Part shown: positions 26,311-47,560 of the stretch, one piece after another | Position numbering within the stretch: the first letter of the stretch is position 1 | Layout: every line of letters starts with the position of its first letter | From: Macrostomum lignano | Taxonomy: Eukaryota | DNA length: 64,000 nt | Direction of reading: 5' to 3' | Assembly (NCBI GenBank): GCA_002269645.1 | Contig: NIVC01001414.1 | Location: forward strand, 1-64,000 | The notes under the pieces: generated by a model | The model's database searches: none | What the model saw: the letters and a program-made list of their open reading frames with translations, nothing else | Told to the model about the DNA's origin: nothing | Translations under genes and position numbers: made by a program

Positions 26311-26311
26311 G

Positions 26312-26612: not shown

Positions 26613-26633
26613 TGACGGACTGAGCTTGCTGCC

Positions 26634-29600
26634 ATGGCAGAGCGAGGGAAGCCACCATTTCCTAACAAAAAAGTAAGTAAAGTTCAAGTAAGAAAACTAA
26701 AAGTATAATCATATTTGTAGTCTTGACTGCAGTTGCGGAAACTCACTCACATGTTTGAATGTGCAGCTTGGGTGCCACAATTGCAGTTGCAGGAACTCAC
26801 TCACATGTTTGAATGTGCAGCTTGGGTGCCTCAATTGCAGTTGCAGGAACTCACTCACATGTTTGAATGTGCAACTTGGGTGTCTCAATTGCAGTTGCAG
26901 GAACTCTCTGACATGTTTAAATGTGCAGCTTGGGTGCCTCAATTGCAGTTTCAGGAACTCACTCACATGTTTGAATGTGCAGCTTGGGTGCCTCAATTGC
27001 AGTTGCAGCAACTCACTCACATGTTTGAATGTGCAGCTCGGGTGCCTCAATTGCAGTGGCAGGAACTCACTCACATGTTTGAATGTGCAGCTTGGGTGCC
27101 TCAATTGCAGTTGCAGGAACTCACTCACATGTTTGAATGTGCAGCTTGGGTGCCTCAATTGCAGTTTCAGGAACTCACTCACATGTTTGAATGAGAAGCT
27201 TGAGTGCCTCAATTGCAGTTGCAGGAACTCACTCAGCCGGACCCCAGCAACCGGGCAAGCGTCGGATCCTCACCAGCCGATCTCCAGACTCTCGCTCACG
27301 ACGTCATCCAAGGTGACTTCGGCCAGGTGCGGCGGCTGGCAACGCGCCAGCTGGTCACCAGCGCTGATGCAGCTCGTCGGACCGTCCTCATGCTGGTGGC
27401 CGACGCTCCTGAGACTCCCGTGCACACTGAAAAGTGCATATTGTACTTATTTGAGCTGGGCGCGAACCCCAAGGCGGCTGACGCGAACGGCGACACGGCT
27501 GCGCACCTGGCAGCCCGGCGGGACCACCTGCGGCTGCTGACGCTGCTATCGTTCGATGCGAAGTGGCTGCGGAACGACAACGGCGCCACTCCGCTGATGG
27601 AGGCGGCGCGGACTGGAAGCTGGAGATGCGCCAAGCACCTGCTGCACCTGCTCAGGCAGAGAAGGTTTAACGAGTGCAAGGAGCACGAAAACTCGAAGAG
27701 ATCGCGGCTGCTCAGACTGAAGGATCGCGAGGGTCGGACGGCGTCAGACCTGGCGAGGCTCAGCGGCCACTCAGAGCTGGCCAGCTACATCGAGCGGTGA
27801 GTGAGCAGTTCGCTGCTGTGTCCATCAAGTTTTGCAGCATTCGGCTGGCTATGGTGGCCAGAGCTGCAGTCTCAGGCCAGCCAATCAGAGCCAGTCAGCT
27901 GAACTTGTCTCTGTCTGACTGCTTGATGGACGAGAGCTGTGATTGGCTGGCTGCCTCCTAGCCAATGGGGTGCCGGTTGATCTCAGTCGAGAATGGAAGC
28001 TGTAGGGCCTCGGTGTGCAGTGAGAGTGTGTAGGTTGAGCTGCAGATGGAGAACTGGGAGGCTGTGCGTGAGTGCTTTGTGAGACATTGTGAGATGGAAG
28101 GAAACTCATGCTGCAGAAATGGAAAAGAGCTGCGTGTGAGAAGTCGGATGCGCTCTCGCCAATGCTGATTGTTGCAGAGCTGCTGCAGTCTTCTTGGAAA
28201 CTCCATCTGCGAGCTGCTCAGATAATCAGGAAATTCAGTTATCTAAATTTATTACCAAAATTCTATTGTAGAACTATAAACTTTTTAATGGCTGTCAAAG
28301 TTGTAAAATTTTAGAAACATTTGCTGCTCATTTTGGCTGTTGCAGGGAGATGCGGCTGGTTGTGAGCAAAGGTGGCAGGATCTTCGGCCTGACAGCCCAG
28401 GTGAGCGGAATCTGCGGTGCCGATGCGGCTGCAGCTGAGCAGCTGTGCTCAAATTTCCCGCTCGCCTTTGCAGGAGGAGGCGGATCGACAGGAACTGCAG
28501 CAGCTGGCCGAGGCGGGCGACTCGGCGGGGCTGCGGCGAGCGGCGACCCGCGGCAGCTGCGACCTGCCTGACAGAGATGGTTACACCGCGTTGATGTTGG
28601 CAGCTCACAACAGCTCGTGCGGTGATGAGGCTCTGTGGGAGCAGCTGGTGCAGCTGGGTGATCCCACATGTGCTGATACACGGGCTGAAATTTGCCTGCA
28701 CCATGCAGCCGGACCTGGAAACTCTGCTGCAGCCTCCGCTCTGCTGGCTGCCGGAGCCTCCGCCAATGTCAGGGAAGATCTGTGTGACTTTACGCCCCTC
28801 ATGGCGGCAGCCTTTGCGCCCCCCACCACCGCCGCCGCATTCGGTCGGGTTCTGCTGGACTCAGGGGCGGATTGGAGCCTGAAGGACATGCCGGGCAGGA
28901 CTGCGCTGGATTTGGCCACACAGGAGGGAAAGAGCGAACTGGCTGAGCTGCTGCGTGGGTGAGTTTCCATGGCGACTGAGAATGTCTCTCTGACTTTGAT
29001 TTATCATTGATAAAAATTATGCTGTAATTTATGATTGAATATTGAGCAGCTGACTGCAGTTGCTCAGAGTGGGCATTTTTACATTTTTGTAGTTTAAATG
29101 GGCAGCAGACACTGACTGAGCTTCATTGAGGAAGTTTGCATAGGTAATTTAATTTAAAATTTAATTTCATAGGTAATTTAAGCAAAAGGAAGAAATGAAG
29201 CACAGAGCATGATCTTCAACCTGAATTCCTCTAACTTTAAACTCCGCACTGCCTACTTAGGTACGGCGGCAAGATTTACTTCAACGAGCCTCTGGCACTC
29301 CCGTGAGTTCCTTCAGCACACACAGCTACAGCACACACAGCTACAGCACACACAGCTACAGCACACACAGCTACAGCACACAGCTACAGCACACAGCTCC
29401 AGCACACACAGCTACAGCACACACAGCTACAGCACACACAGCTACAGCACACAGCTACAGCACACACAGCTACAGCACACAGCTACAGCACACACAGCTA
29501 CAGCACACAGCTACAGCACACACAGCTACAGCACACAGCTACAGCACACACAGCTACAGCACACAGCTACAGCACACACAGCTACAGCACACAGCTACAG

Positions 29601-30756
29601 CACACACAGCTACAGCACACAGCTACAGCACACACAGCTACAGCACACAGCTACAGCACACACAGCTACAGCACACAGCTACAGCACACACAGCTACAGC
29701 ACACAGCTACAGCACACACAGCTACAGCACACAGCTAGATCATGCTAATTATCCCTCATTGCCTCAATTCGCATCCCCTCAGCCCCCCGTTCCTGGAGCG
29801 CTGGGACAAAGTTCGCCTCATCGGTCGCGGAGGCTCTGGCAAAGTCCACGAAGTTCGAACTGACACGGGCGTCACATGCGCTGCCAAGACTCTCAAACTG
29901 CCTGTGCAGCTCGGTGATGACCAAACCCCTGTGAGCAAGGAGATCCACAGAGCTGTCGAGAGCGAGAGAAACCTGTGCCGACTGCGGCATCCCAACATCG
30001 TCAGGTTCTTGCACATCGCTCAGCCGAAGCCCGCCAAAGTCGTTGTGTTCATGGAGCTGCTGGACGGCCGAAGCTTGGAGAGGTTTATCGGCAACAAGCC
30101 GCTGGACGAGCCAAAGATTCGAGACTTCAGCGAGCAGGTGAGCATTGTGCATCCTTGATGCTCCTGTTCCATGTTTTCATGAATGATGACTGCTCACTGA
30201 CCGACCGCTCGCAGATCTGCAGCGCGCTGCTCTACCTGCACAGCCAGCAGCCGCCCGTGATCCACAGAGACATCAACTGCTCCAACATAATTGTTCGTGC
30301 TGACAAGACCCGAATCAAGCTGATCGACTTCGGCCTGTCAATTAAGCTGGAGCAGTCAGTCAGCCACATCTCAGGCTCCACTCCGTTTCCCAAAGGCACT
30401 CTGAACTTCATGGCGCCAGAGCTGCTCGGAGCGGGACAGTCGGAGAGCGACAGCGTGCAGTACAGCAGAGAGTCGGACATCTGGGCGTTCGCTGCTCGGT
30501 CTTCCAGATGGCGTCCGGCGCGAGGCCGTTCGCGAACGCCAGGAGCTTCTTAGAAATGGCCCAGCTGATCGACAGGAGGGGCGCCCCCGCCCTGCCGGAC
30601 GGCCGGTCCGCAGAGCTGCAGGACTTCTACAGCCGCTGCACCACCAAGGACCGCAGGAAGAGAAAGTCAGCAGGGGAGCTGCTGGAGCACGAGTTTCTGA
30701 CGGGTGGGAAGCTGAAAACGCGATTGCTGGGCTCGCTTTTCGGTGTAAGGAAATGA
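26634..30756 (+). CDS. Ankyrin-repeat Ser/Thr protein kinase. Exons 26634-26672, 27225-27796, 28346-28400, 28474-28958, 29783-30137, 30215-30756
   Basis: All introns GT-AG with consistent phases (0,2,0,2,0). Ankyrin motifs GDTAAHLAA, GATPLMEAA, GRTASDLA, GYTALMLAA, FTPLMAAA, GRTALDLA. Kinase GRGGSGKV, AAK, alphaC Glu, HRDIN, DFG, GTLNFMAPE, SDIW. One 1-nt deletion near 30491 (F[G]CSVFQMASG). Confidence 0.88.
26727..27235. repeat. 54-bp tandem array (~9 copies) that includes the exon-2 splice acceptor
   Basis: Unit TTGCAGTTGCAGGAACTCACTCACATGTTTGAATGTGCAGCTTGGGTGCCTCAA; single copy in the paralogue at 42750-42810. Confidence 0.93.
29321..29737. repeat. (CACAGCTACAG[CA])n 11/13-bp minisatellite in intron 4 of the ankyrin-kinase gene
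   Basis: Same unit as 45596-46204. Confidence 0.95.
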
Positions 30757-30937
30757 GAGAAACCGGTCAGAGCGCTCTTCGATGGCGAAAATGGCTACTT
30801 AGCTTAGATTTACCTTGGAACTCTCTGCAGTCAGCTTTGTATGAGCAATTTTTAGAAACTTTTTTCTTCACTAACATGATAATTCTACAAGATAGCCAGA
30901 AAACTGGCAGTGCCTGAGTTTTAAATTAGAAATTGCA

Positions 30938-31553
30938 AGAAGTAGACAAAGAGTAGACAAAGAGTAGACAAAGCGTAGACAAAGCGTAGACAAAGAGTAG
31001 ACAAATAGTAGACGGAGTAGACACGGGTAGACAAAGAGTAGACAAATAGTAGACAAAGAGTAGACAAAGAGTAGACAAAGAGTAGACAAAGAGTAGACAA
31101 AGAGTAGACAAAGAGTCGACAAATAGTAGACATAGAGTAGACAAAGAGTCGACAAATAGTAGACAAAGAGAAGAGAAAGAGTAGACAAAGCGTAGACAAA
31201 GAGTAGACAAATAGTAGACGGAGTAGACACGGGTAGACAAAGAGTAGACAAATAGTAGACAAAGAGTAGACAAAGAGTAGACAAAGAGTAGACAAAGAGT
31301 AGACAAAGAGTAGACAAAGAGTCGACAAATAGTAGACATAGAGTAGACAAAGAGTCGACAAATAGTAGACAAAGAGAAGAGAAAGAGTAGACAAAGCGTA
31401 GACAAAGAGTAGACAACTAGTAGACGGAGTAGACACGGGGTAGACAAAGAGTAGACAAAGAGTAGATAAAAAGTAGAGATAGAGTAGACAAAGAGTAGAC
31501 AAAGAGTAGACAAAGAGTAGATAAAGAGTAGAGAAAGAGTAGACAAAGAGTAG
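30938..31553. repeat. (AGTAGACAAAG)n 11-bp minisatellite just downstream of the kinase stop
   Basis: Tandem copies; explains the hydrophobic STLCLLFVY ORFs. Confidence 0.95.
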
Positions 31554-33148
31554 AGCTCTGCAAAGCTGAGTCAATTTTACTACAGTTTCAAATGGTACTG
31601 GTCAACCGAAAAGCATGTACTGTCTGGGTTGAAATTTCCAACCCAGAATTAAAGTGCACCCTGTCTCAGTTCAGATTAGAAAACCATAAACTGGCCTGCG
31701 AAACGATGAGGACTGCGAGACCAAAGATGCCTTAGGAGAACGGGACCTGCCCAAAGTGCCGTGTGGGGTGGAAATCGAAGTTCAGCTCCTGTTTTATAGT
31801 GCTCCCAGTGATAAACTTAAACAGAAAATCCTCAATAAAATGTTGAATTTTAACAATGCTAATTTCCTAATAAGTCTGGAAGATGAAGACACCGAAAACT
31901 CATCAGACAGAACGCAGCATCCCTGGGCCTTTATATCAGTACCAATAAAAACTGGCTCAAATACTCTGCGTATCATATTTTGATTTCTTTTCCGTAATGT
32001 AGAAGTTTTCATTCACTAACTGGAACAACTTGTGGTTATTTTTCAAAAATAATAGTATTACCACCAATAATAACAGTTTTCATGTGCAGATTGCACAGTT
32101 TGATTACTGAAGTTTCAATTGAGAATCCTCTGCTCAGCTCAATAGCTTTTTTCTGCTTGCCAAATTTTCTTTCCCCGTTGTCATGGAAACTACAGGCCGG
32201 TTGTTTGCTCTGACGATTTTGTTCTTTTGAGTTCTTGTTGGTTTGAATTTCCAGTTTTCTTCTCTGAGCTGAATTTGTAACACGCAATGCATGTGTTGGA
32301 CTGTTTATTTACTCAGATACTCCAGTTCCTGCTGATGCCATCTCACTGAGCTCACTGAGCAGCAATGCAAAACGGCAATTCAGATATTCGGAAACAAAGC
32401 ACTCATTATTTTCAACACTTAGCTGGGGTTTGCTCTAAGCCACGCAGCTACAGGACTCAAAAGCTGCGGACTGATGCAGAAGAGACGCTGGGAATTACAG
32501 AAATCTCACAAGAAATCCCGTATAGAATTAGAATTTCGGTGGGCGAGACTGCAAGATGGAGAGCAGAGGCTGGTCTTCAGTACAGCTCCATCCCCTGCCT
32601 CAGTCCCTGCTGCATCCATTCGGTCTGAACCCTCAGCTCAAATCTGCAGGCATAAAGTTAATCAGCTTCAGCCACGACTGAATTGTAGCACAGTGCAGGC
32701 TGGACAACTCTTGTGCCAGTAAGAGATGCAGTCAGATAAGCCATGGCAACTGTTTACAGTATTTTAATGCTGAAGCAATGGCTAAGCTGAACTGTGATTA
32801 CATAGCTGGCTGTGAGCGAACCATAAACATCATCAACTCTGCTTCTGCATCCTGTGCAGCCTCTCGGGTGCTTCACGCAGCTGCAGCGCCACTCGCTCTT
32901 CCGGTGGGCCGCTGCGGTCTGCCTTGTAGCGTTGCTGCCTCATCAGCCTCTGCAGATCGGGTCTGATCGGAATCTGAGTGCGCACCTGATGAAGCTCTGT
33001 GCGAGTCTGGGTGGCGACATGCATGCTGTGCAGCATGGCTCAGATGGCAAGCTGCCGGGTTAATTCGACATGATGTAGTTTCTGGTGCACAGACCTTTGC
33101 CAGAATTTAAATTTTCTAATGGTTAGAAAATCACGACCGTTAATACTA

Positions 33149-33985
33149 CTGACACATCACAGCTCACGATTTGCATGGGGACACTGAGTAGTCACTGCTG
33201 CTGACACATCACAGCTCACGATTTGCATGGGGACACTGAGTAGTCACTGCTGCTGACACATCACAGCTCACGATTTGCATGGGGACACTGAGTAGTCACT
33301 GCTCCTGACACATCACAGCTCACGATTTGCATGGGGACACTGAGTAGTCACTGCTGCTGACACATCACAGCTCACGATTTGCATGGGGACACTGAGTAGT
33401 CACTGCTCCTGACACATCACAGCTCACGATTTGCATGGGGACACTGAGTAGTCAGTGCTGCTGACACATCACAGCTCACGATTTGCATGGGGACACTGAG
33501 TAGTCACTGCTGCTGACACATCACAGCTCACGATTTGCATGGGGACACTGAGTAGTCAGTGCTGCTGACACATCACAGCTCACGATTTGCATGGGGACAC
33601 TGAGTAGTCACTGCTGCTGACACATCACAGCTCACGATTTGCATGGGGACACTGAGTAGTCACTGCTGCTGACACATCACAGCTCACGATTTGCATGGGG
33701 ACACTGAGTAGTCACTGCTGCTGACACATCACAGCTCACGATTTGCATGAAGACACTGAGTAGTCACTGCTGCTGACACATCACAGCTCACGATTTGCAT
33801 GGGACACTGAGTAGTCACTGCTGCTGACACATCACAGCTCACGATTTGCATGGGGACACTGAGTAGTCACTGCTGCTGACACATCACAGCTCACGATTTG
33901 CATGGGGACACTGAGTAGTCACTGCTGCTGACACATCACAGCTCACGATTTGCATGAGGACACTGAGTAGTCACTGATGCTGAGA
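33149..33985. repeat. 52-bp tandem repeat (~16 copies)
   Basis: GACACATC recurs at 33151 and 33203; copies nearly identical. Confidence 0.95.
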
Positions 33986-34023
33986 CACGAGTGCGCTAAT
34001 TCTCACTGCATTGGCTGGCATAT

Positions 34024-34958
34024 GGGCTGGATTGGTGAATGGGCTGGATTGGTGAATGGGCTTGATTGGTGAATGGGCTGGATTGGTGAATGGGCTTGAT
34101 TGGTGAATGGGCTGGATTGGTGAATGGGCTGGATTGGTGAATGGGCTGGATTGGTGAATGGGCTGGATTGGTGAATGAGCTGGCTTGGTGAATGGGTTGG
34201 CTTGGTGAATGGGCTGGATTGGTGAATGGGCTGGATTGGTGAATGGGCTGGATTGGTGAATGGGCTGGATTGGTGAATGGGCTGGATTGGTGAATAGGCT
34301 GGATTGGTGAATGGGCTGGCTTGGTGAATGGGCTGGATTGGTGAATGGGCTTGATTGGTGAATGTGCTGGATTGGTGAATGGGCTGGATTGGTGAATGGG
34401 CTGGATTGGTGAATGTGCTGGATTGGTGAATGGGCTGGATTGGTGAGTGGGCTGGATTGGTGAATTGGCTTGATTGGTGAATGGGCTGGATTGGTGAATG
34501 GGCTTGATTGGTGAATGGGCTGGATTGGTGAATGGGCTGGATTGGTGAATGGGCTGGATTAATGAATGGGCTGGATTGGTGAATGGGCTGGATTGGTGAA
34601 TGGGCTGGATTGGTGAATGGGCTGGATTGGTGAATGGGCTGGATTGGTGAATGGGCTGGATTGGTGAATAGGCTGGATTGGTGAATGGGCTGGCTTGGTG
34701 AATGGGCTGGCTTGGTGAATGGGCTGGATTGGTGAATGGGCTGGATTGGTGAATGGGCTGGATTGGTGAGTGGGCTGGATTGGTGAATGGGCTGGATTGG
34801 TGAATGGGCTGGATTGGTGAGTGGGCTGGATTGGTGAATGGGCTGGATTGGTGAATGGGCTGGATTGGTGAGTGGGCTGGATTGGTGAATGGGCTGGATT
34901 GGTGAGTGGGCTGGATTGGTGAATGGGCTGGATTGGTGAATGGGCTGGATTGGTGAAC
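34024..34958. repeat. 17-bp minisatellite GGGCTGGATTGGTGAAT
   Basis: Tandem copies; explains the NPAHSPIQPIHQSSPFT ORFs. Confidence 0.95.
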
Positions 34959-35879
34959 TGGCTGGCTCCCCTGTCAACGCAGTGGCTGAGTTCGCTAAGA
35001 ACCACGCAGGGCCCGAGAGAAACGGAAGAGTCGAGAGGAGGCGGCATTTCTGAGTCGCTGCAGAGGCCGAGCAGTCGTGAGCAGCACAGCGATGCTCAGC
35101 CAGCAGGCAACTCCAGCTGCTCAAAGCCCAGAATGCACCAGAATGCTCAACCGATCCATCTGCATAAAAAACCTGCAGTGACAACAAAATAAATCCATCA
35201 CATGCTACTCATAGGGTGAAGCGATTCGTGAGTAGTGCTCAAGTGCATTGCCATAGACATGTCCTGAGCTGCTTCTGAGCTGCATCTGCACAGCCGTGAG
35301 CACACAGAAGAGCGGCTATAATCTCTCTCGAATCTGCACTCTCGCACGAGGCCTCACCACAGGTGCAGAGCTCAACCAGCAGCAATGCGAGCGACACCAA
35401 GAAGTGCAGAGTTTCCAACAGAAGCTCTGCTTCTGCAGATCAACGGAAGGTGCGACGTCTCCCCCCCCCAAATGTAGGATGTCTAATAATGAGGCTGATG
35501 AGCATTTTGCAACCTGTTGCTGCCCAATTTGCTCAACTGTAATTGCTTATTGAGCTGCTTGTGACGCTAACTGCTTTTTGTCTGCTTAATATCAAAATCT
35601 AATGTAATTGTTTAATGTTTACTGTTCGATGTTTAAAATTAGTCTTCATTTTACTCCAGTAACTTTAATCTTGCTGTAAATAAGTGCATCCACAGATACT
35701 TTTATATTGTTATGTAGTCCTGTGCAAATTTCAGATACTATATTAAAACTACTACTTTTTTTATTCTTCACCTCAGGAGTAATATCTATGGCGTTTTATT
35801 TCGACTTTAGATAAGATAGCTGATTGAGAGGTTCAATGGTCTCTTTTGAATGCCAAATTTGTTAAATATCTCCTGCATT

Positions 35880-38748: not shown

Positions 38749-39379
38749 ACAATTTCATCCCCTGCCGCCGATGAGGTGGGGAACCGCTTTCCTATCGACG
38801 GCGGGGCTTACACAACACAGCGCATGCAATTAAACAGCACTAGACATGGCCGTAACTACGGGGGCGAAGGCTAGACGCTGAGACTTGGCGGATTACTCTG
38901 GTTGCGTTAAAGCATCTGGGGGAGCTCAGTTCACTGTCCTTCTGTGCGGGCCGGCCCACGCATCCACCCCTCGGTTGCCACGCTGGTCGGGGTTGGGCGT
39001 CTGTCCCGGGCCTGCCCGCAGCTCCTCCCCAGGAGCGGCCTCCGCTCTGGGCTCATTAAGAATTCTCCGGCCGGCCGTCTCCGCCTGTCAACCGTCAAGG
39101 TCAAATTGCCGCCTCGCCTTTGATCTCTGTCTGAAATTGATGGGAGCTGCTGTAGCTTTGCCATGCGCTGCGTGTGCTATTGTAGGCTCAGCCTATGCCC
39201 ATTTCTATTGTTCTGTCTTAATAATTTCTAAACCCTATAGAGGGGGTCGGGGCAGATGCAGGGACATAGAAGTAGCACCACTTGACTTGAAGCACAGACT
39301 AATAAGTATAAGCATGCTTCCAGCTCGCTGCTCTCTGTTGATTTACAAAATGCAGCGAAATCAACGTTGCGAGCTGCGG

Positions 39380-39742
39380 CTGCGGTGGCAGTCTTCCATT
39401 TCTTTTCAACTTTCTGCAGCAGATGGTCAGGGAACGCCGGGTAGATGGAAGGAACGGCATTTGGATTTTGAAGCTAGGCAGAAAGCCTGCAAATTTTTCT
39501 TTGAAGCAAGATTCCTCAAAACGCATTGAGCAGACTTGCGTGGATGGCGATGGCTCAGAATCTTTTCTTCTCAGCGCTATCAGCCACTTTTTTCTCATTT
39601 CCTCGTCCTTTGGAAAAGTATGAAAGGACACTCCCGCCAAAGACATTGCTGAGTTGTTCGAGCAGCCAACAGCGCAGCAAAAGCTGCCGTACTTTCCCTT
39701 TCTTTTTCTCGGCAATTTAGAAGATACAGGTTGTTCTTTCAT
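39380..39742 (-). pseudogene. THAP-domain ORF, probably a transposase-derived relic
   Basis: FCCAVGCSN...SFHTFPKDEEMRKKWL...VCSMRFEE (His to Arg). AVPSIYPAFPDHL is recoverable after a frameshift. No DDE core seen. Confidence 0.75.
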
Positions 39743-40224
39743 TTCGTTTTGAGCAACTATTAATTTTTAATAGCTTTGCTTAGCTGTTCAAAGTTAGTAT
39801 AGCATTGCTATTATGGTCCCCAAGCCACATTAATATACATGTATATTTAAAAAAGGGCAGAGTGCAGACAGCTGAAGAAGGGCCAGTCTTCCCCAGGCCA
39901 AAAATATCGATTGTTTTGGGCTGGGGAAGAGAGGACCATTTTTTGCTTTGTCATTTTGTCAAAAACGAGCCAAGGCAAGCAATGCTGGACGCGCTGTTTA
40001 GTAGTACTTATTGGTCTGTGATTAGCCAAGGAGTCCCTGCTTTAAGCCTCAGAATATTAAGTTGAAGTCGGGGCTACTGGATAAGGGATGGGGGTTGAGG
40101 TAGAGCAGGGAAGCAACACAAAGACAAACAAGTTGAAATTTACAAGGCATGAGCTCATGACGCCACGCTGATATACGCGCTTGTTTTATTTTCAGTGCTG
40201 TACAAATGAAGGAATTAGTCGACT

Positions 40225-40842
40225 GGGTCGCTTTCACAAACCCTAAATTTCACAACGTCGAAAACAAAACGCACCAGACTGCATAAACTATAAATTTCAC
40301 AAGTCCTAAATATCACAACGCCTAAAAACACTATGGTGATACAATCTTCTACAATCCTTCTGTATCCTATGTGTCGTGTGTTGCACGTGTTAGGAGTATT
40401 CGCGCTTGGCGAGACTGTGGGCGTAGCCACAGCCCTTTACAAGTATATATTTGAGTTTGTTCATAAACAATAGTGTATGCATGAATAAGAAACTAAAGCG
40501 TCTGGCTGCCACAGTTTGTACATGTATCGCCATAGTGTTTTTAGGCGTTGTGAAATTTAGGTCTTGTGAAATTTAGGTCTTGTGAAATTTAGGTCTTGTG
40601 AAATTTAGGGCTTGTGAAATTTAGGGCTTGTGAAATTTAGGGCTTGTGAAATTTAGGGCTTGTGAAATTTAGGGCTTGTGAAATTTAGGGCTTGTGAAAT
40701 TTAGGGCTTGTGAACTTTAGGTGATGTGCAATCTGCTACATTGCTTATTTTACACGTTGTGAAAATTAGGGTTTATGAAACATAGGTCTTATGAAAGGTT
40801 CTGGTTTCGAAGTAATGAAAATTAAGGTTTGTGAAACGACCC
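40225..40842. mobile_element. Foldback/MITE-like element built from a 16-bp subterminal repeat (TTGTGAAATTTAGG[G/T]C)
   Basis: Termini GGGTCGCTTTCACAAACC / GGTTTGTGAAACGACCC; inner inverted pair 40292-40343 and 40523-40574; ~10 tandem units at 40548-40715. No clear TSD. Confidence 0.65.
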
Positions 40843-42602
40843 TACCTTCCTGCCCCCATTTTTTCCTGCTCTGCCAAGCAGTGAAATAGGGAAATTTCAC
40901 AACGCCTAAAACAGGAAAATGCAGCCTCCTTCACATCGTCTAAATTTCATAACGCCTACAATCTTTGCAATTGCTTCTCTCTTTCACATTCAGTTGTGAA
41001 ATGAAATTTAGGTGATATGAAATTTAAGCGATGTGAAGTCATGTGCTTTAGACGTGAAATTTCACATTTAGGTGATGTGTAATCATGTACATGTGCTTTA
41101 AGCGTTGTGAAATTGTGTATAATCTTTTTTACAAATCAGTTGTTTTCGGATTTCTACGAAACATGTGCTGTTTTGGCATATAGAATTAAATTCAGCATTC
41201 GTTTAAATCCAAGTTTAAGGAATAATATTCCATTGGGGCTGCTCAGAAGATAGAGTTTGACTTTGAGCAGCTAGACTTTGCCTCCTATAGCACATTTTGA
41301 CCATTAATAGGGTTTGAGACAGACAGGGATCTAATGCACCTACCATGTACAGTTCCGAGTACAAAATGACAGCTGAGTAACGGACTTCTAAAAAGCAAAA
41401 TTAATTTGCCTGGGGTCGTACTGTGGTGTCTTTAACATTCCTTTCCGCTCACTGAGGCCACCTTCCCTCAGGTTCTCTTCAGAAACCCCTCGCTGTGTGT
41501 TCTAAGTCCCATTTGGTTCAAGGGGCCTTTCTTTGGCTTTTAGCCATGCAGTCATCATTCGCCGCCGCATGGGATTTTGTCAGCTTTTAGTTATTTATTG
41601 CCCCTCTTCATATTTTCTTGCATTGCTTTTTTTAGTCAAAAGCAGGGTTAATTTCTCGCTTTGTTGATTTACTCGTAGTTATACAAACCAACTCTTCCTC
41701 AAAGATAAATGTCACGTACAGGACAGGGAATTCCCGGGAGTCGACGGGGGCCCCGAATTAGTTTCCCGCCAGCCAATGAAACAATTCATTCCGTGAACCC
41801 AACTGTACATCTTTATATTCATGCTTTTTAAGTTTATGGTTCCTTTCGTTTAGGCCTTTTTATGCTGTTTTGCATGAATGTCTATGTCTCTGCCTCTTCA
41901 GAGACTATTTTCAGCCTCTTTTCTCTGAAATTTTCAGTTTCTACTGTTCACATAGACCTGCCCCACAATAGAGCTGACAATCTTTATCTCAGCATATCTG
42001 TGAGACTTAAGAAGAGCCTCAATGCTATTTCTGCCTAGAAACTGCGAAATAATCATGTTAATAAAAACTTTTCACACTCAATTACCAAGCATGCATCTAT
42101 GAGATTTCACATTTTCGAACTCATGGAGTTTACAGCCAGTGCAGTTGCGGCTTGCAGCACTATTTTTCGGTCAGAAATTTTGAGCAAAAGCAGCAGGCAG
42201 AGTAGAACACTTATTAACAATAATGTGCTCAAGCTGTTTATGTTTGCACTGATCTGACTTCACCGCAACACCGGAGTTGGCTTAAAAAGAGTATCATATT
42301 TACAATTTTAATTGCACCAATTTTACAAAAAATTCACAGTCGCACACTGAGTGCTTTAAGCAGCCATGCACTGTTTTTCAGCAGTTCTGCTGTTCCCTCA
42401 AAGCCAATGGGAGAGGCAGAAAGCTGGGCAGAGGCGGCCGCACAAGCCAGCAAAAGCAGCCGCAATCTGAGCAGGCAGGGTGAGAAGGAATTCGCTGCAG
42501 CTGCTCCAGAGCCAATAAAATCTGCTGCAGAGGCGACCGCTGCCCTGAGGACTCTCGGGCTGAGCTGAGACACCTGCGGCAGCCAGCACAGTGCGATTCA
42601 GC

Positions 42603-45600
42603 ATGTCAAGCGACTCAGAGGATTCTGATAAAGAAACACCATTTCCCGACGAAAAAGTAAGTCAAGAAAAAGTGAGAAAACTGAAGCACAATATTAACTT
42701 TACGCTTGATTGCAGTTTGCAGCTAGAACTGAAGTTTGAATTGATCTCAAACTCACATGTTTGAATGTGCAGCTTGGGTGATTTAAATTGCAGCTGCAGG
42801 AACTCACTCAGCCGGACTCCACCAACCGGGCAAGCGTCGGAGACTCACCAGCCGATCTCCACACTCTCGCCCACGCCGTTATCCGAGGTGACTTCGGCCA
42901 GGTGCGGCGGCTGGCAACGCGCCAGCTGGTCACCAGCGCTGATGCAGCTCGTCGGACCGTCCTCATGCAGGTGGCCGACGCTCCTGAGAGTCCCGTGCAC
43001 ACTGAAAAGTGCATCTTGTACTTATTTGAGCTGGGAGCGAACCTCAAGGCGGCTGACGCGAACGGCGACACGGCTGCGCACCTGGCAGCCCGGCGGGACC
43101 ACCTGCGGCTGCTGACGCTGCTGTCGTTCGATGCGAAGTGGCTGCGGAACGACAACGGCGCCACTCCGATGATGGAGGCGGCGCGGACTGGAAGCTGGAA
43201 ATGCGCCAAGCACCTGCTGCACCTGCTCAGACAGTACAGGTTCAATGAGTCCCAGAAGCACGGAAACTCGAAGAGGTCGCAGCTGCTCGGACTGAAGGAT
43301 CACGAGGGTCGGACGGCGTCGGACCTGGCGAGGCTCAGCAGCCACTCAGAGCTGGCCAGCTACATCCAGCGGTGAGTGCCTTTGTGCACCTGTCTGGGGC
43401 GTGTGAGAAGTCGGATGCGCTCTCGCCAATACTAGGCCATATGAATATAATGAGCAACTGCTCCAACTCAAGCATTTACTCGGGCCTGTATGAATAAACT
43501 GAGAAATTGTTGATGAGAAAATGCTCATGAGAATTTTCTCAAGAGAATTTGCTCCGATTTCAGAGCAAATAATACTCTGAAATGTACTGATCGTTGCAGA
43601 GCTGCAGCAGTCCTTTTGGAAACGCCACCTGAGTCGGAGCAATTGCTCAATCGTGAGAATGTTCTCTGAATCTGAGCAAGTGCTCATCGGGGGTATGAAT
43701 AAAGAATAAACTCAAACTCTGAGAATATTCTCCGTAGCTTGAGTAACTGATCAGAATGTTTTTGGCCAAGGCAAAAATCGTTCATACGGCTTCTTGCCGT
43801 TAGTACGGCTTTTTACGGCTTTTTAGGGTTTCTTACTTACGACTGCTTTTTCTCTCGCTTCTCAGAGCAAACTGGCTTAAAAGTTCAGAAGCAAGTTTTT
43901 GGCCACAAACAGAAAAAAGAGCCCATGCTCCAGAGTTTGAAAATCTCAAGAAAAGCTTAGTTTCAGTTTTCAGGAGTTTAGCTTTGACTGCTTCTATCAG
44001 ATTTTTACACTGCGACTCGTTCTTGAGTCTGCCAGGAGGCTGCCTCAACGTTGTCTCACGATTTCGCGGGCAAGACGGCAGATTCCGTGCCCGCTGTTTT
44101 AGTCTATGGCCAATCGTGAAACAACATAGTTCTGACTATGGATTTTCAGGCAGGAATTAGCTGAATCCTCGGGCTTCGCATTTTCTCTGAAATCGGAGCA
44201 AATTCTCTTAAAAAAATTCTCATGAAAAATTTCTCAGTTTATTCATACAGGCCCGAGTAAATGCTTGAGTTGGAGCAGTTGCTCATTTTATTCATATGGT
44301 CTAATTTGAAATTTCTGTTTACTAACTCATCATGAAAATTCTATTGTACACTTTACGCTCGTAAATTCAATTTTAGTGATTGCTGTAGTCGGATTTTAGA
44401 AAATTGAGAATTTGCTGCTCATTTTTATTATTGCAGGGAGATGCGGTTGCTTGTGGATGCAGATAATTCAATCTCCGGCCTGACAGACCAGGTGAGCGGC
44501 ATCTGCGGTGCCGATGCGGCTGCAGCTGAGCCGCTGTGCTCAATTTTCCCGATTGCCTTTGCAGGATGAGGCGGATCGACAGGAACTGCAGCGGCTGGCC
44601 GAGGCGGGCGACTCTGCGGGGCTGCGGCGAGCGGCGACCCGCGGCAGCTGCGACCTGCCTGACAGTAGGGGTTTCACCGCGTTGATGTGGGCAGCTGGGA
44701 ACAGCTCGTGCGGTGATGAGGCTCTGTGGAAGCAGCTGGTGAAGCTGGGTGACCCCGCCTGTGCAACAGAAACCTCTTTAAGCTGCCTGCATTTTTCTGC
44801 CGAGGCTGGCAATTCTGCCGCAGCCTCCGCTCTGCTGGCTGCCGGAGCCTCCGCCAATGCCATAGAGGCGGGGATGAGTGAATACACGCCCCTCATGCTG
44901 GCAGCCATTTCGGCGCCCCCCGCCACCGCTGCCGCAGTCGGTCGGGTTCTGCTGGACTCAGGGGCGGATTGGAGCATGATGAATTACGGCGGCATGACTG
45001 CGCCGGAATTCGCCACACTGCAGGAGGAAAAGAGTGAACTGGCTGAGCTGCTGCGTGGGTGAGTTTCCATGGCGACTGAGAATGTCTCTCTGACTTTGAT
45101 TTATCATTGATTAACATTATGCTGTAATTTATGATTGAATATTGAGCAGCTGACTGCAGTTGCTCTAAGTGGACATTTTTACATTTTTGTAGTTTAAATG
45201 GGCAGCAGGGACTGACTGAGCTGCATTGAGGGAGTTTGCAGTGCAGTTTGACTGCAGATTGCCAGTTGAATATTAATGTTCAGCTGCCTGCGAGCTGTGA
45301 GACACCAGCAAGCAGTTTGCTGCGACATTTGAGTTAAAAATTTAAATAGGCAATTTTCTGATGTTTAAAATCTATGATTGTAAACAAGCAATTACAAGCA
45401 ATTTTATTTAGTAATTTATTTAAAAAAATTGATGAAATTACCTACAGAGCATGAGTTCTCACCTGAATTCCCTTGAATTCAGACTCCACACTTCCTATTT
45501 AGGTGCGACAACAAGATATACTTCGACGAGCCTCTGGCACTGCCGTGAGTTCATTTGGCACATAAATATTTAGCTACAACAGACTAAAACAGCCAACACA

Positions 45601-47560
45601 GCTACAGCACACAGCTACAGCACACACAGCTACAGCACACAGCTACAGCACGCAGCTACAGCACGCAGCTACAGCACACAGCAACAGCACACAGCTACAG
45701 CACACACAGCTACAGCACACAGCTACAGCACGCAGCTACAGCACACAGCAACAGCACACAGCTACAGCACACAGCTACAGCACGCAGCTACAGCACACAG
45801 CAACAGCACACAGCTACAGCACACACAGCTACAGCACACAGCTACAGCACGCAGCTACAGCACGCAGCTACAGCACACAGCTACAGCACACAGCTACAGC
45901 ACGCAGCTACAGCACGCAGCTACAGCACACAGCAACAGCACACAGCTACAGCACACACAGCTACAGCACACACAGCTACAGCACACAGCTACAGCACGCA
46001 GCTACAGCACGCAGCTACAGCACACAGCTACAGCACACAGCTACAGCACGCAGCTACAGCACGCAGCTACAGCACACAGCTACAGCACACAGCTACAGCA
46101 CGCAGCTACAGCACGCAGCTACAGCACACAGCTACAGCACGCAGCTACAGCACGCAGCTACAGCACACAGCAACAGCACACAGCTACAGCACACACAGCT
46201 ACAGCCAGAAGAAGTGTTGTCATAGCACACACCGCTGAGAAAAATGCGAAGCTTTTCCAACCATTCCAGAGGACAAGTTGTCGCGGACCATGCTTATGAC
46301 GAGAAACTGAGTGACGATGAAGAAGATCCGTGAGTCAATGTTAATTGTGTCATGCAGAAACTGCTTAACAAATGTTCACTGATTAGTTAGAGCAATTGAA
46401 TGTTTCGTTATGTCAATTAAATACTTTTCAGAAACCTCAAAGGAGCCAAGTGTGTTAAGCAAGTTAGACATCAACTGTCAAGGTGCTTCTACATAATTTG
46501 CTTCTATAAATTTTGTGTTGTCAGTATAAAACCACATTGAGCATCTGCTGCATTCCAGGCACGAAGAAGATTTCTATCCAGTGACGAACCCGCAAGGCTA
46601 CTGCCTGATCATCAACATCAGCAAGTACGACTCTGGAAGTGATATCACACTCAGTCTTGCAGAGCGTCAAGGTTCAGATCGTGATGTTGACCGAGTGAAG
46701 CAGATATTCGAGAGGTTGCGCTTCATCGTCAAGATAAAAAAGGACCTCACTGCTGAGCAGTTGGATGATTTCCTCCATGAGATTAAAAAGTCACGGGACC
46801 TTGCCAAGCACGGCAGTTTTGTCTGCTTCTTGATGGCGCACGGCAGCCACGACTGCATCTACGGTAAGAACGGCGTGCCCTGCGAAATTCGAAACCTGAC
46901 GGAAAAGTTCAAGGTAAGCCACTATAGCTAATAATATCATGTTTGTTATTTTATGAGCGTATATAGGCAAGAACAGGGATATGAAAATTCCTAAGAATTC
47001 TTAAGAGTAGAAACCAATGATATTGAAACGAGAGTAATGTTTAGCCTGTTTTTCGTCTCTGCAAAAGGCTAGGCTAAACTGTACTCTTAGTTTATAAGGC
47101 CGAAGACTCCACTGCCAATACCATCGCATCACAGAGCTCTGTCTGCCGCAGCCTTGAAGGAAAGCCGAAGGTGTTCTTCATCCAGGCCTGTCGCGGCAGC
47201 CGTCGCGACCGAGCTGTTGCTCGGAGCTCTCGTGAGCAAACGGACGAGGCAGGCGCTCCGGTTTACAACTCCGCAATCCGCCCTGCAGAGGGCGACTTTC
47301 TGCTCTGCTACGCCACCACTCCAGGCTCAGCCGCCTTTAGAAACATCGACTCGGGCTCGCGGTACGTGCAGACTGTTTGCGAGTTCATCGAGAAGTACTT
47401 CCGTGAGCTCGACCTAATTACCATTATGACCAAGGTGAGCGGCTACTTGCACAAGAACCCGGTTCAGGTGAAAGGCGGCCTGTATCACGTTGTTCCGCAG
47501 AAAGTCGACCAGCTTTCAAGCCTGGTTAGCTTCGATCCAGATAGAGCTCGGAAAGCTTAG
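42603..47560 (+). CDS. Ankyrin-repeat caspase. Exons 42603-42656, 42800-43371, 44437-44491, 44565-45058, 46270-46329, 46559-46913, 47135 (or 47099)-47560
   Basis: GT-AG introns with consistent phases. Exons 1-4 are paralogous to the kinase gene. Caspase FYPVTNPQGYCLIIN, RQGSDRD, FLMAHG (His), GKPKVFFIQACRG (Cys), EGDFLLCYATTPGSAAFRN..GSRYVQ. Confidence 0.88.
43433..44303. mobile_element. Non-autonomous DNA transposon with long TIRs (>75 bp near-perfect, ~130 bp overall) in intron 2 of the ankyrin-caspase gene
   Basis: TAGGCCATATGAATATAATGAGCAACTGCTCCAACTCAAGCATTTACTCGGGCCTGTATGAATAAACTGAG is the reverse complement of 44230-44303; TA at both ends. Confidence 0.85.
45596..46204. repeat. (CACAGCTACAG/CGCAGCTACAG)n minisatellite in intron 4 of the ankyrin-caspase gene
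   Basis: Same family as 29321-29737. Confidence 0.95.

What the first reader, a model, noticed from the sequence alone, without database searches (positions are those of the whole stretch)
26634..47560. Paralogous ankyrin sensor genes with swapped effectors: kinase versus caspase
Seen: both genes share promoter, exons 1-4 (about 9-10 ankyrin repeats in two blocks), intron positions and much intron sequence. After the phase-2 intron 4, one splices to a STE/MAP3K-like kinase and the other to a caspase with intact His/Cys. Established: sensor-effector swapping is a hallmark of immune receptors (NLRs, fungal HET, RNase L with ankyrin plus kinase-like domain). Inference: an undescribed modular ankyrin-receptor family routing recognition to either phosphorylation or proteolytic cell death, possibly acting as a linked pair.
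Basis: partly seen in the sequence, partly recalled or inferred. Interest (0 to 1): 0.92.

Follow-up and report, generated by a model that had tools for sequence, protein, structure and literature searches.

The report
Flatworm ankyrin module swapped between kinase, caspase
Two neighbouring genes of the flatworm Macrostomum lignano carry the same ten-repeat ankyrin front end, joined in one gene to a protein kinase and in the other to a caspase. They belong to a family of about 50 genes whose ankyrin binding surface is hypervariable, which resembles an immune-type sensor family, but no function has been tested.

Summary
Window 26017-29733 and 42273-45972 are a 3.7-kb duplicated 5' gene module (85-93% DNA identity). 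It is followed in gene A by two kinase exons and in gene B by caspase exons, with matching splice phases.

- A fifth shared 42-nt exon was missed.
- Gene B has two further small linker exons.
- Gene A's kinase has a 1-nt deletion in this assembly.

The window is Macrostomum lignano. Gene A equals an existing UniProt protein (670/671 residues, kinase intact there). Gene B's last ankyrin repeat plus caspase equals UniProt A0A1I8HPJ2. RNA-seq-derived GenBank models of paralogues carry the fused ANK-linker-caspase and ANK-linker-kinase reading frames.

The family has about 50 clusters in M. lignano:
- about 20 ANK-kinase
- about 10 ANK-caspase
- ANK-kinase-caspase
- ANK plus an unknown domain

The swap point lies at a shared intronic minisatellite. 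Canonical binding positions of ankyrin block 2 are hypervariable (0/10000 permutations); block 1 is not.

ANK-prodomain caspases of flatworms are already published, and so is a kinase-prodomain caspase of M. lignano. The shared diversifying module and the swap are not. Sensor function and the "linked pair" idea remain inference.

The parts
26017..26332 (+). Gene A upstream / 5'-proximal block shared with gene B (42273-42580)
   Evidence: blastn 88% over 316 nt. Not found upstream of the paralogues in L001-L003.
26634..26672 (+). Gene A exon 1 (MAERGKPPFPNKK), phase 0
   Evidence: ATG and GTAAGT donor read. The N-termini of P0005, P0008 and P0013 are similar.
26674..27235 (+). 54-nt minisatellite in intron 1 of gene A; each unit repeats the exon-2 acceptor and the first bases of exon 2
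   Evidence: the repeat finder family D9; blastn.
27219..27796 (+). Gene A exon 2: ankyrin block 1 (5 repeats, conserved)
   Evidence: Pfam Ank_2 1.8e-13; 89% aa identity to gene B; low entropy across 19 paralogues.
28346..28400 (+). Gene A exon 3 (55 nt, connector EMRLVV...)
   Evidence: Splice sites; tblastn 100%.
28474..28958 (+). Gene A exon 4: ankyrin block 2 (5 repeats, hypervariable binding positions); ends in phase 2
   Evidence: Pfam Ank_2 2.4e-15. Only 65% aa identity to gene B, with dN/dS 0.96. Site tests.
29261..29302 (+).
   Evidence: The homologous exon is used in P0001, P0005 and P0002.
29323..29729 (+). (CAGCTACAGCAC[AC])n minisatellite in intron 5 of gene A; end of the A/B similarity, i.e. 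the swap junction
29783..30137 (+). Gene A exon 6: kinase N-lobe (GRGGSGKV, CAAK)
   Evidence: Pfam Pkinase 1.6e-11. The phase-2 acceptor fits exon 4 or exon 5.
30215..30756 (+). Gene A exon 7: kinase C-lobe (HRDINCSN, DFG, APE). One G is missing at 30490/30491, which shifts the frame. Stop codon at 30754-30756 in the restored frame.
   Evidence: Intact in P0006 and in paralogues.
42273..42580 (+). Gene B upstream / 5'-proximal block shared with gene A
42603..42656 (+). Gene B exon 1 (MSSDSEDSDKETPFPDEK)
42794..43371 (+). Gene B exon 2: ankyrin block 1
   Evidence: Pfam Ank_2 1.3e-15; 93% nt identity to gene A.
43433..44303 (.). MITE-like insertion in intron 2 of gene B (108-nt terminal inverted repeats)
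   Evidence: the repeat finder I1, 90% complementary.
44437..44491 (+). Gene B exon 3
44565..45058 (+). Gene B exon 4: ankyrin block 2; ends in phase 2
   Evidence: Pfam Ank_2 1.2e-11. Its last 62 residues are the N-terminus of UniProt model P0102.
45503..45544 (+). Gene B exon 5 (GCDNKIYFDEPLALP)
45599..46205 (+). Same minisatellite in intron 5 of gene B
46270..46329 (+). Gene B exon 6 (acidic linker GQVVADHAYDEKLSDDEEDP)
   Evidence: Homologous to 'RKIVTDHSEEPRDD' of P0001.
46432..46482 (+). Gene B exon 7 (linker)
46559..46913 (+). Gene B exon 8: caspase p20 part, catalytic His codon at 46839-46841
   Evidence: Pfam Peptidase_C14 1.6e-19; caspase-3 1.5e-39.
47135..47560 (+). Gene B exon 9: QACRG (Cys codon 47189-47191), intersubunit linker and p10; stop codon at 47558-47560
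   Evidence: Pfam 1.6e-15.

Best explanation
**What is shown.** The window is from Macrostomum lignano. It carries two tandem, same-strand members of a multigene family seen only in M. lignano in these databases (about 50 clusters at 90% identity).
- Every member starts with the same roughly 400-residue module: a short exon 1, ankyrin block 1 (exon 2), a connector (exon 3), ankyrin block 2 (exon 4), and a 14-residue 'Y.GK.YF.EP' exon 5.
- A variable 3' cassette is spliced in phase 2 behind this module. It can be an STE-like protein kinase (gene A and about 20 clusters), a caspase-3/8-like caspase (gene B and about 10 clusters), kinase followed by caspase (P0251), or a ~570-residue domain with no detectable relatives.
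- In the youngest clade, the 5' module of kinase-type and caspase-type genes is 85-95% identical, introns included. The similarity stops inside a (CAGCTACAGCAC)n minisatellite that lies directly 3' of exon 5.
- The effector cassette begins 50-65 nt after that minisatellite.

**Inferred history.** Ectopic recombination or gene conversion bounded by this minisatellite moved or homogenised the 5' module between kinase and caspase genes.

**Inferred mechanism.** Ankyrin block 1 is a constant part. Block 2 is a diversified recognition surface. Binding of a multivalent or oligomeric partner to block 2 would bring the C-terminal enzymes together. Long-prodomain caspases and STE-type kinases are both switched on by such induced proximity, through dimerisation followed by autoprocessing or trans-autophosphorylation. 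The same sensor could therefore be wired to proteolysis, to phosphorylation, or to both. The family would then act as an intracellular stress or non-self sensor set without an NTPase domain.

**My confidence by step.**
- Family membership and architecture: about 0.9.
- Fused transcripts for these two genes: about 0.8.
- Block 2 as a selected recognition surface: about 0.45.
- Activation by induced proximity, with an immune or stress role: about 0.3.
For: **Species and gene identity.**
- All specific hits are M. lignano.
- The gene A model equals P0006 at 670/671 residues.
- P0102 equals gene B's exon-4 tail plus caspase at 100% identity.

**Fused reading frames in RNA-derived models.**
- P0001 is ANK-exon 5-linker-caspase (731 aa, 99% query cover).
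- P0005, P0008 and P0010 are ANK-exon 5-kinase.
- GenBank BOX15 models come from StringTie/TACO/TransDecoder on RNA-seq (PMC5730564).
- Exon positions are conserved in loci L001-L004.

**Splice phases.** All are consistent.

**Effector identity.**
- Kinase: the best solved relatives are MKK5, ASK1, MEKK2 and PAK1, at E about 1e-26.
- Caspase: caspase-3/7 at 1e-39 in the PDB, and DED-caspase-8 among the best non-Macrostomum hits in the profile search.
- The caspase dyad and the Arg/Gln/Arg P1 pocket align with caspase-3.

**Family census.**

**Swap junction.** The same minisatellite lies after exon 5 in A, B, L001, L002 and L003, but not in the divergent L004. The A/B similarity ends within it.

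**Recent exchange.**
- In the ANK-module NJ tree, caspase-linked modules appear at four or more positions, and B nests among kinase-linked modules.
- Exon-2 dS is 0.07-0.12 between all crown copies, whatever their effector.
- B's caspase differs from its nearest DNA-level paralogue by dS 0.27-0.41.

**Diversification.**
- Exon-4 dN/dS is 0.8-2.0, against 0.34-0.55 for the effector exons.
- At the 24 a-priori ankyrin binding positions of block 2, pN is 0.465 against 0.126 elsewhere (0/1000 random sets).
- Entropy at those positions is 1.86 against 0.52 bits in 19 paralogues (0/10000). Block 1 shows no enrichment.
Against: - No transcript data for these two loci could be read here. The two UniProt models of A and B skip exon 5, and I did not verify how they were made.
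- ANK-only models end exactly after exon 5 (P0003, P0019). An in-frame ATG lies upstream of each effector cassette (29742, also in frame in L002; and 46244). Separate products are therefore possible.
- Gene A is frame-shifted in this assembly.
- P0001 and P0022 have lost the catalytic Cys (QAGRG), and P0013 reads the kinase exon out of frame. Part of the family may be decaying.
- Whole-exon dN/dS near 1 also fits relaxed constraint. Synonymous differences are raised at the variable codons too (pS 0.40). Pairwise Nei-Gojobori estimates on 6-7 gene-converting paralogues are crude.
- The kinase catalytic loop reads HRDINCSN (Lys replaced by Asn), so activity is not certain.
- No ligand, no expression data and no phenotype are known.
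- Bootstrap values of the NJ trees were not displayed.
Confidence: 0.5

Rival explanations
1. The ankyrin exons and the effector exons make separate products. An ANK-only protein would end after exon 5. A stand-alone kinase or caspase would be expressed from an internal start, or as a downstream cistron of a polycistronic precursor. The fused models would then be annotation or assembly artefacts.
For: - ANK-only models P0003 and P0019 end at '...EPQAMP' and '...EPLAPP', which is what retention of intron 5 gives (CC|GTGA reads Pro-stop).
- In-frame ATGs exist at 29742 (also in frame in L002) and at 46244.
- 15% of M. lignano genes lie in operons, and 7% of assembled transcripts are precursors (PMC8629364; PMC5730564).
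- P0103 and P0104 are caspase-only partial models.
Against: - Continuous fused ORFs occur in RNA-derived models at many independent loci (P0001, P0005, P0007, P0008, P0010, P0030, and three P0251 loci).
- Downstream of its acceptor, the first Met in the kinase exon comes after the Gly-loop and the VAIK Lys.
- The spliced leader ends in ATG, but that ATG would be out of frame at both effector acceptors.
- The ATG upstream of the caspase cassette is out of frame in paralogue L003.
- P0103 and P0104 begin inside the translated minisatellite without a Met, so they are truncated models.
- All three consecutive introns keep phase 2.
Confidence: 0.12
2. This is a recently amplified, largely decaying repeat-like gene family. 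The variability of block 2 reflects relaxed constraint and patchy gene conversion rather than selection for new specificities, and there is no sensor role.
For: - dN/dS is about 1 over exon 4, and 0.5-1.7 over exon 2.
- Gene A carries a frameshift.
- The catalytic Cys is lost in P0001 and P0022, and P0013 is out of frame.
- L002 contains nested partial module copies.
- The loci are embedded in minisatellites and transposons.
Against: - Relaxed constraint would not leave the repeat framework nearly invariant while concentrating change on the a-priori binding positions of one block only.
- The effector exons show purifying selection (dN/dS 0.16-0.55).
- Most family ORFs are open, and gene B is open over 704 codons.
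- Gene A's protein is intact in another assembly.
- The models are transcribed.
Confidence: 0.2
3. The ANK module is an ordinary prodomain or scaffold that places caspases and kinases in housekeeping apoptosis and MAPK-type signalling. This is what has been proposed for the ANK caspases of parasitic flatworms. The paralogues would differ by tissue or stage rather than by ligand.
For: - ANK-prodomain caspases are a known platyhelminth feature, interpreted as initiators (PMC11463336).
- Ankyrin block 1 and the connector are highly conserved, which fits a common partner.
- M. lignano has lineage-specific genome duplication that inflates copy numbers.
Against: - About 50 clusters with a hypervariable canonical binding surface are more than a housekeeping adaptor needs.
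- The same module is wired to at least four different outputs.
- No expression data were available in either direction.
Confidence: 0.25

Closest known systems
ANK-prodomain caspases of platyhelminths ('ANK caspases'; Genome Biol Evol 2024, PMC11463336; first noted in Schistosoma, Lee et al. 2014 as cited there)
   Same: An N-terminal ankyrin-repeat prodomain sits in front of a p20/p10 caspase, in a flatworm. The catalytic domain lies near the DED-caspase (caspase-8) group. [quoted passage not shown]
   Different: - The paper describes them as restricted to parasitic flatworms and absent from free-living ones. This is a free-living species with at least 10 clusters.
- Here the prodomain is a family-specific two-block module also used by about 20 kinases.
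- I could not retrieve a neodermatan ANK caspase, so common origin of the prodomains is untested. None appeared among the best 150 caspase-profile hits.
[quoted passage not shown] This is probably the ANK-kinase-caspase proteins BOX15_Mlig018903g1-3 (P0251), though the kinase-ANK-caspase proteins (P0305) also fit the paper's description.
   Same: It has the same ANK module (HMM match over 3-348, E 2.5e-74), the same kinase type (HRDIN.NN) and the same caspase clade.
   Different: It carries both effectors in one 1060-aa reading frame, and it is basal in both my kinase and caspase NJ trees. Genes A and B each carry one effector only, and no remnant of the other is left in the window. It suggests that single-effector genes may descend from a two-effector ancestor.
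RNase L (ankyrin repeats + pseudokinase + KEN nuclease)
   Same: This is a resemblance in mode of action only. N-terminal ankyrin repeats bind a ligand, and the resulting dimerisation switches on a C-terminal enzyme next to a kinase-fold domain (from general knowledge, not tested here).
   Different: There is no KEN domain (Pfam). The kinase here keeps the Gly-loop, VAIK Lys, HRD, DFG and APE motifs. No sequence relationship beyond generic ANK and kinase folds was seen.
NLR / fungal HET-type STAND receptors with ANK, TPR or WD sensors and exchangeable effectors
   Same: Both have a repeat domain with hypervariable binding positions and swapped effector domains, sit in a large lineage-specific paralogous family, and lie in tandem arrays.
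   Different: No NACHT or NB-ARC NTPase is present in any member (precomputed Pfam lists). The repeat domain is N-terminal and the effector C-terminal. This is not a member.
Metazoan ANK-kinases (TNNI3K, ILK: ANK then kinase; RIPK4/ANKK1 and DAPK1: kinase then ANK)
   Same: The domain order ANK then kinase matches TNNI3K and ILK. The catalytic-loop Lys is replaced by Asn, as I recall for TNNI3K (from memory, not tested).
   Different: The best solved relatives are STE-group kinases, not TKL. No TNNI3K, ILK or RIPK is among the best 60 of 87 PDB matches. A separate M. lignano family with kinase-ANK-caspase order exists (P0305).

Membership tests
Caspases (peptidase family C14A) | p20/p10 caspase fold detectable by profile | tested here: met
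   Pfam PF00656: 1.6e-19 (46581-46931) and 1.6e-15 (47171-47560). Caspase-3 at 1.5e-39.
Caspases (peptidase family C14A) | Catalytic His-Cys dyad (xHG ... QACxG) and the Arg/Gln/Arg pocket for P1 Asp | tested here: met
   MAHG (His 46839-46841) and QACRG (Cys 47189-47191). ERQGS Arg and FRN Arg align with caspase-3.
Caspases (peptidase family C14A) | Asp-directed proteolytic activity and autoprocessing | not testable with these tools
   Only a candidate linker site (REQTD/E) is seen.
Platyhelminth ANK caspases (PMC11463336) | Ankyrin-repeat prodomain N-terminal to the caspase in one polypeptide | tested here: met
   The gene B 704-aa model is open. P0102 joins exon 4 to the caspase. P0001 is RNA-derived.
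Platyhelminth ANK caspases (PMC11463336) | Placement inside the monophyletic ANK-caspase clade with neodermatan sequences | not tested
   No neodermatan ANK caspase was retrieved. The paper places an M. lignano kinase-prodomain caspase as sister to that clade.
Platyhelminth ANK caspases (PMC11463336) | Restriction to parasitic flatworms (as stated by the authors) | tested here: not met
   The host is free-living M. lignano.
Eukaryotic protein kinases, STE group | Protein kinase domain with Gly-loop, VAIK Lys, HRD, DFG and APE | tested here: met
   Pfam Pkinase 1.6e-11 / 1.3e-19. Motifs GRGGSGKV, CAAK, HRD, DFG and MAPE are present. The catalytic-loop Lys is Asn (HRDINCSN).
Eukaryotic protein kinases, STE group | Intact reading frame in this window | tested here: not met
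   A 1-nt deletion at 30490/30491. The frame is intact in P0006 from another assembly.
Eukaryotic protein kinases, STE group | Group assignment by closest characterised relatives | tested here: inconclusive
   The best PDB matches are MKK5, ASK1, MEKK2 and PAK1, at only about 1e-26. PLK2, WNK and GCN2 are not far behind.
NLR / STAND immune receptors | Central NACHT or NB-ARC P-loop NTPase | tested here: not met
   Only Ank*, Pkinase* and Peptidase_C14 are found in A, B and their relatives.
NLR / STAND immune receptors | Hypervariable repeat sensor plus exchangeable effector domains | tested here: met
RNase L-like ANK-kinase-nuclease | C-terminal KEN ribonuclease domain | tested here: not met
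   No such Pfam hit. The protein ends 20-30 residues after the kinase domain.

The most novel reading that the evidence does not exclude
The family is a new kind of intracellular innate-immune or stress receptor that works without a nucleotide-binding oligomerisation domain. In this reading a constant ankyrin block is followed by a positively selected, hypervariable ankyrin block that recognises diverse non-self or damage ligands. That module is wired by exon-cassette exchange at a recombinogenic minisatellite to caspase (death), kinase (signalling), both, or further effectors. Ligand-induced proximity would be the common trigger.
Probability: 0.25. Interest if true: 0.85.

Novelty: new variant of a known kind. 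Interest (0 to 1): 0.6.

Why it matters
**If the inference holds.** A genetically tractable flatworm, with transgenesis and RNAi available, would offer a compact receptor family in which one recognisable sensor module is naturally wired to phosphorylation, proteolysis or both. That would make two questions directly testable. One is how new immune or cell-death receptors arise by cassette exchange. The other is whether induced proximity alone is enough to couple a sensor to different enzymes.

**What already follows from the sequence data.**
- A published statement needs correcting. ANK-prodomain caspases are not confined to parasitic flatworms. M. lignano has several kinds, and the reported 'kinase-prodomain caspase' is one architecture of a larger ANK-module family.
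- The data give a concrete example of a minisatellite marking an exon-shuffling junction.

Tried and rejected
1. **Profile search with full-length ANK-caspases, meant to reach ANK caspases of other flatworms.** Beyond M. lignano the list was flooded by generic ankyrin proteins, so it says nothing on that point.
2. **Caspase-only profile.** I ran it against the word-indexed database and exhaustively against 1.84 billion representatives.
   - The nearest non-Macrostomum hits were Mytilus and mite multi-caspase proteins, caspase-8 and the like.
   - The relation to neodermatan ANK caspases therefore stays open.
3. **Supplement of PMC11463336, for the accession of the M. lignano kinase-prodomain caspase.** It is not held.
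4. **Direct transcript contigs.** No Logan or ENA contig carries the A or B products. P0006 and P0102 have no contig on record.
5. **The third effector (C-terminal ~570 aa of P0031, P0033 and P0042).** It has no Pfam hit at E up to 5 and no PDB sequence relative. I did not model its structure because only three close sequences were available.
6. **Literature search for family gene IDs and for ankyrin+kinase in Macrostomum.** Nothing turned up.
7. **TNNI3K/ILK-type kinase.** I considered it because of HRD.N and rejected it on the PDB ranking.
8. **'Window from another Macrostomum species'.** I considered it when the first hits were 66-81% identical and rejected it after the 670/671 match to P0006.

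Full report
**1. What is in the sequence**

The window is eukaryotic and rich in minisatellites and transposons. A self-comparison shows one duplicated segment. A 26017-29733 matches B 42273-45972 in four collinear blocks of 85-93% identity.

Pfam finds ankyrin repeats in the two long ORF pieces of each copy. It finds a protein kinase only behind copy A and a caspase only behind copy B. tblastn finds no further kinase, caspase or module fragment anywhere in the window.

I built both gene models by hand. All introns are GT-AG and all phases agree.
- Gene A: 26634-26672, 27219-27796, 28346-28400, 28474-28958, 29261-29302, 29783-30137, 30215-30756.
- Gene B: 42603-42656, 42794-43371, 44437-44491, 44565-45058, 45503-45544, 46270-46329, 46432-46482, 46559-46913, 47135-47560.

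Gene B is open over 704 codons.

Exon 4 ends in phase 2 and the effector exon accepts in phase 2. Four corrections apply:
- A shared 42-nt exon 5 was missed. It runs phase 2 to phase 2, so the frame holds with or without it.
- Gene B has two short acidic linker exons before the p20 exon, and its last exon starts at 47135.
- Exon 1 is diverged and intron 2 is not shared. B has an 870-bp insertion there with 108-nt inverted ends.
- Gene A's kinase lacks one G at 30490/30491. The expected DIWAFGCSVFQM motif is split between two frames.

**2. Organism and database identity**

All specific protein hits are Macrostomum lignano.
- The gene A model is identical at 670 of 671 aligned residues to P0006, a UniProt entry for M. 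lignano. The only difference is the residue lost through the frameshift, and P0006 reads WAFGCSVFQ. The window is therefore M. lignano. The frameshift is either an assembly indel or a very young null copy.
- P0102 (UniProt A0A1I8HPJ2, annotated 'Caspase-3-like', 321 aa) consists of the last 62 residues of gene B's exon 4 joined directly to gene B's caspase exons, at 100% identity.

I could not verify how those models were made.

**3. Evidence for fused transcripts**

The GenBank annotation of assembly Mlig_3_7 (locus tags BOX15_) consists of ORFs called by TransDecoder on StringTie/TACO assemblies of RNA-seq and a de novo transcriptome (PMC5730564).

In that annotation, paralogues carry continuous reading frames:
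- P0001: ANK-exon 5-linker-caspase (731 aa, 99% of my query covered).
- P0007, P0023 and P0030: further ANK-caspases.
- P0005, P0008, P0010 and P0011: ANK-exon 5-kinase.

Mapping four of them to their loci shows the same exon layout, including the 14-residue exon 5.

*Points against separate products*
- Downstream of its acceptor, the kinase exon has no Met before the Gly-loop and the VAIK Lys.
- The M. lignano spliced leader ends in ATG (PMC8629364), but that ATG would be out of frame at both effector acceptors.
- The in-frame ATG upstream of the caspase cassette (46244) is out of frame in paralogue L003.

*Points for separate products*
- ANK-only models stop exactly where retention of intron 5 gives Pro-stop (P0003, P0019).
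- The ATG at 29742 is also in frame in L002.
- Operons are common in this species.

I put the fused reading for A and B at about 0.8.

**4. The family**

Two searches recover about 50 clusters (at 90% identity) with this specific module, all from M. lignano:
- about 20 with Pkinase
- 10 with Peptidase_C14
- one with N-terminal SH3 domains
- one with an N-terminal Ras-like GTPase plus kinase
- three with a ~570-residue C-terminal region that has no Pfam or PDB relative
- the rest annotated as ANK only, several of which are truncated or out-of-frame versions

The exhaustive caspase-profile search added P0251 (BOX15_Mlig018903g1-3, 1060 aa). It carries the family ANK module (HMM E 2.5e-74), then the same kinase type, then a caspase, in a single ORF at three loci. 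P0251 is basal in my kinase and caspase NJ trees. This is compatible with a two-effector ancestor from which one-effector genes arose.

M. lignano also has other combinations:
- kinase-ANK-caspase (P0305)
- Roc/Ras-caspase (P0225)
- two further ANK-caspase types with generic ankyrin repeats (P0297, P0326)

**5. Effector identity**

*Kinase.* It is closest to STE-group kinases among solved structures (plant MKK5, ASK1, MEKK2, PAK1; E about 1e-26). 'STE/MAP3K-like' is therefore fair but loose. All core motifs are present except that the catalytic-loop Lys is Asn (HRDINCSN). This substitution is near-universal in the family.

*Caspase.* It aligns best with caspase-3/7 among solved structures (1.5e-39) and with caspase-8 in the profile search. 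The dyad and the P1 pocket residues are intact in B. The closest full-length paralogue, P0001, has QAGRG.

**6. The swap junction and its age**

In A, B, L001, L002 (twice) and L003, a (CAGCTACAGCAC[AC])n minisatellite begins 20-100 nt after exon 5. The first effector exon follows about 50-80 nt after the minisatellite ends. The divergent locus L004 lacks it. The A/B similarity ends inside this array.

Across crown-clade loci the 5' module is 85-95% identical, introns included.
- Exon-2 synonymous divergence is 0.07-0.12 for every pair, whatever the effector.
- B's caspase exons differ from those of the nearest paralogue for which I had DNA by dS 0.27-0.41.
- In an NJ tree of the module, caspase-linked modules occur at four or more places, and B sits among kinase-linked modules.

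I conclude that the module or the cassette has been exchanged or homogenised recently between kinase and caspase genes, with the minisatellite as the boundary. Direction and mechanism (unequal crossing-over versus gene conversion) are inferred, not shown.

The promoter-proximal block (26017-26332 / 42273-42580) is shared by A and B only, among the loci I could read.

**7. Is the ankyrin module a sensor?**

The two blocks behave differently.
- Among 19 crown paralogues, block 1 is almost invariant.
- Block 2 has short hypervariable patches.

I fixed a site class in advance: the positions randomised in designed ankyrin-repeat binders (2, 3, 5, 13, 14, 33). This set is from my own knowledge of the DARPin design, not from a tool. 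I then tested it.
- In block 2 these 24 codons have pN 0.465 against 0.126 for the rest (0 of 1000 random sets).
- Their entropy is 1.86 against 0.52 bits (0 of 10000).
- In block 1 there is no enrichment (155/1000 and 4762/10000).
- Whole-exon dN/dS is 0.8-2.0 for exon 4, 0.42-0.55 for the kinase (ignoring a 38-codon fragment) and 0.34-0.46 for the caspase in comparable pairs.

This is the pattern expected for a diversifying recognition surface on a constant scaffold.

Caveats:
- The comparisons are pairwise Nei-Gojobori estimates on a few gene-converting paralogues.
- Synonymous differences are also raised at those codons.
- Some copies are visibly dead.

I rate 'selected recognition surface' at about 0.45.

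**8. How it most likely works (inference)**

Long-prodomain caspases and STE-type kinases are both activated by induced proximity. A module that binds a multivalent partner can therefore drive either enzyme, which would explain why cassette exchange is tolerated. The acidic linker and the REQTD/E site between p20 and p10 are candidate processing sites.

Nothing here shows a ligand, an immune role or cell death. The 'linked pair' idea is not supported. Neighbouring family members are caspase+caspase on contig NIVC01003438 and an ANK-only-annotated member plus kinase on NIVC01000414, with nested partial modules.

**9. Comparison with what is known**

ANK-prodomain caspases are a published platyhelminth feature. 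They are said to be confined to parasites and absent from the free-living Schmidtea and Dugesia. [quoted passage not shown] That protein is probably the P0251 type, though the P0305 type would also fit the description.

I found none of the following in the held literature:
- the shared two-block module
- its use by some twenty kinases
- the tri-domain and other architectures seen as one family
- the minisatellite junction
- the block-2 hypervariability

The family is not an NLR, because no NTPase domain is present. It is not RNase L-like, because there is no KEN domain. By sequence it is not TNNI3K/ILK-like. Any resemblance to those systems is in mode of action only.

**10. Verdict**

- Novelty: a new variant of a known kind.
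- Interest is 0.6. This is a well-defined, testable candidate receptor family in a tractable animal, but the functional claims are inferential, part of the idea is already published, and both proteins are already in public databases as uncharacterised entries.

Noticed in passing
window 30488-30492: One G is missing (TTCGGCTGC has become TTCGCTGC) in kinase subdomain IX of gene A. The otherwise identical UniProt protein from another assembly is intact. This is either an assembly indel or a very recent null copy.
   Followed up: yes
window 26232-26675, 26620-27343, 29278-29826, 30885-31600, 32983-34113, 33886-35100, 35733-36800, 40492-40779, 45496-46205: Minisatellites are unusually dense, with units of 20, 54, 13/15, 11, 52, 17, 24 and 16 nt. 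They fill a large share of the 11.8 kb between the two genes. The 54-nt array in intron 1 of gene A repeats the exon-2 acceptor about nine times.
   Followed up: partly
window 43433-44303: A MITE-like element (108-nt terminal inverted repeats, 90% complementary, about 870 bp) is inserted in intron 2 of gene B only.
   Followed up: partly
window 39299-39742 (- strand): An ORF of 147 aa with a THAP zinc-finger domain (Pfam 2.7e-14) lies between the two genes on the opposite strand. It may be a domesticated or transposon-derived gene.
   Followed up: partly
window ~17700-24600: This is a Maverick/Polinton-like element. It has a PLA2-like ORF (17725-18417, -), an rve integrase (18205-19245), a protein-primed B-family DNA polymerase split into two ORFs (19844-21301 without a Pfam hit, 21404-23443) and a weak adenovirus-type protease match (23772-24173).
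   Followed up: partly
window 14088-16832 (- strand): A 914-aa open LTR-retrotransposon pol ORF has an unusual domain order: integrase (H2C2, rve) before RT and RNase H. It may be two elements read through.
   Followed up: no
window 52467-53131 (+) and 53608-55467 (-): A Copia-type gag fragment is followed by exons of a kinesin motor-domain gene on the minus strand. The kinesin introns are filled with minisatellites.
   Followed up: no
related proteins P0251, P0363, P0364 (BOX15_Mlig018903g1-3): A tri-domain ANK-module-kinase-caspase protein of 1060 aa is present at three loci. It is basal in the kinase and caspase trees. It may be the ancestral architecture, and it is probably the published 'kinase-prodomain caspase'.
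   Followed up: partly
related proteins P0031, P0033, P0042: The same ANK module and 'Y.G..YF' motif are followed by a ~570-aa region with a degenerate P-loop-like motif, a coiled coil and a Cys-rich stretch. It has no Pfam or PDB relative and is an unidentified third effector.
   Followed up: partly
related proteins P0001, P0022; P0013: The closest full-length ANK-caspase paralogue has lost the catalytic Cys (QAGRG). P0013 reads the kinase exon in the wrong frame. The family therefore contains pseudo-enzymes or decaying copies.
   Followed up: partly
L002 1-17354 (NIVC01000414.1): There are three copies of exon 2 and three of exon 4 within 17 kb, and the span of the P0005 gene contains a second, nested ANK module. 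Locus L004 has a second caspase copy downstream (11490-12627).
   Followed up: no
related proteins P0305, P0273; P0225, P0362; P0297; P0326; P0110: M. lignano has further unusual caspase architectures: kinase-ANK-caspase, Roc/Ras GTPase-caspase, two other ANK-caspase types and an LRAT-like-caspase. This suggests a broad lineage-specific diversification of caspase prodomains.
   Followed up: no
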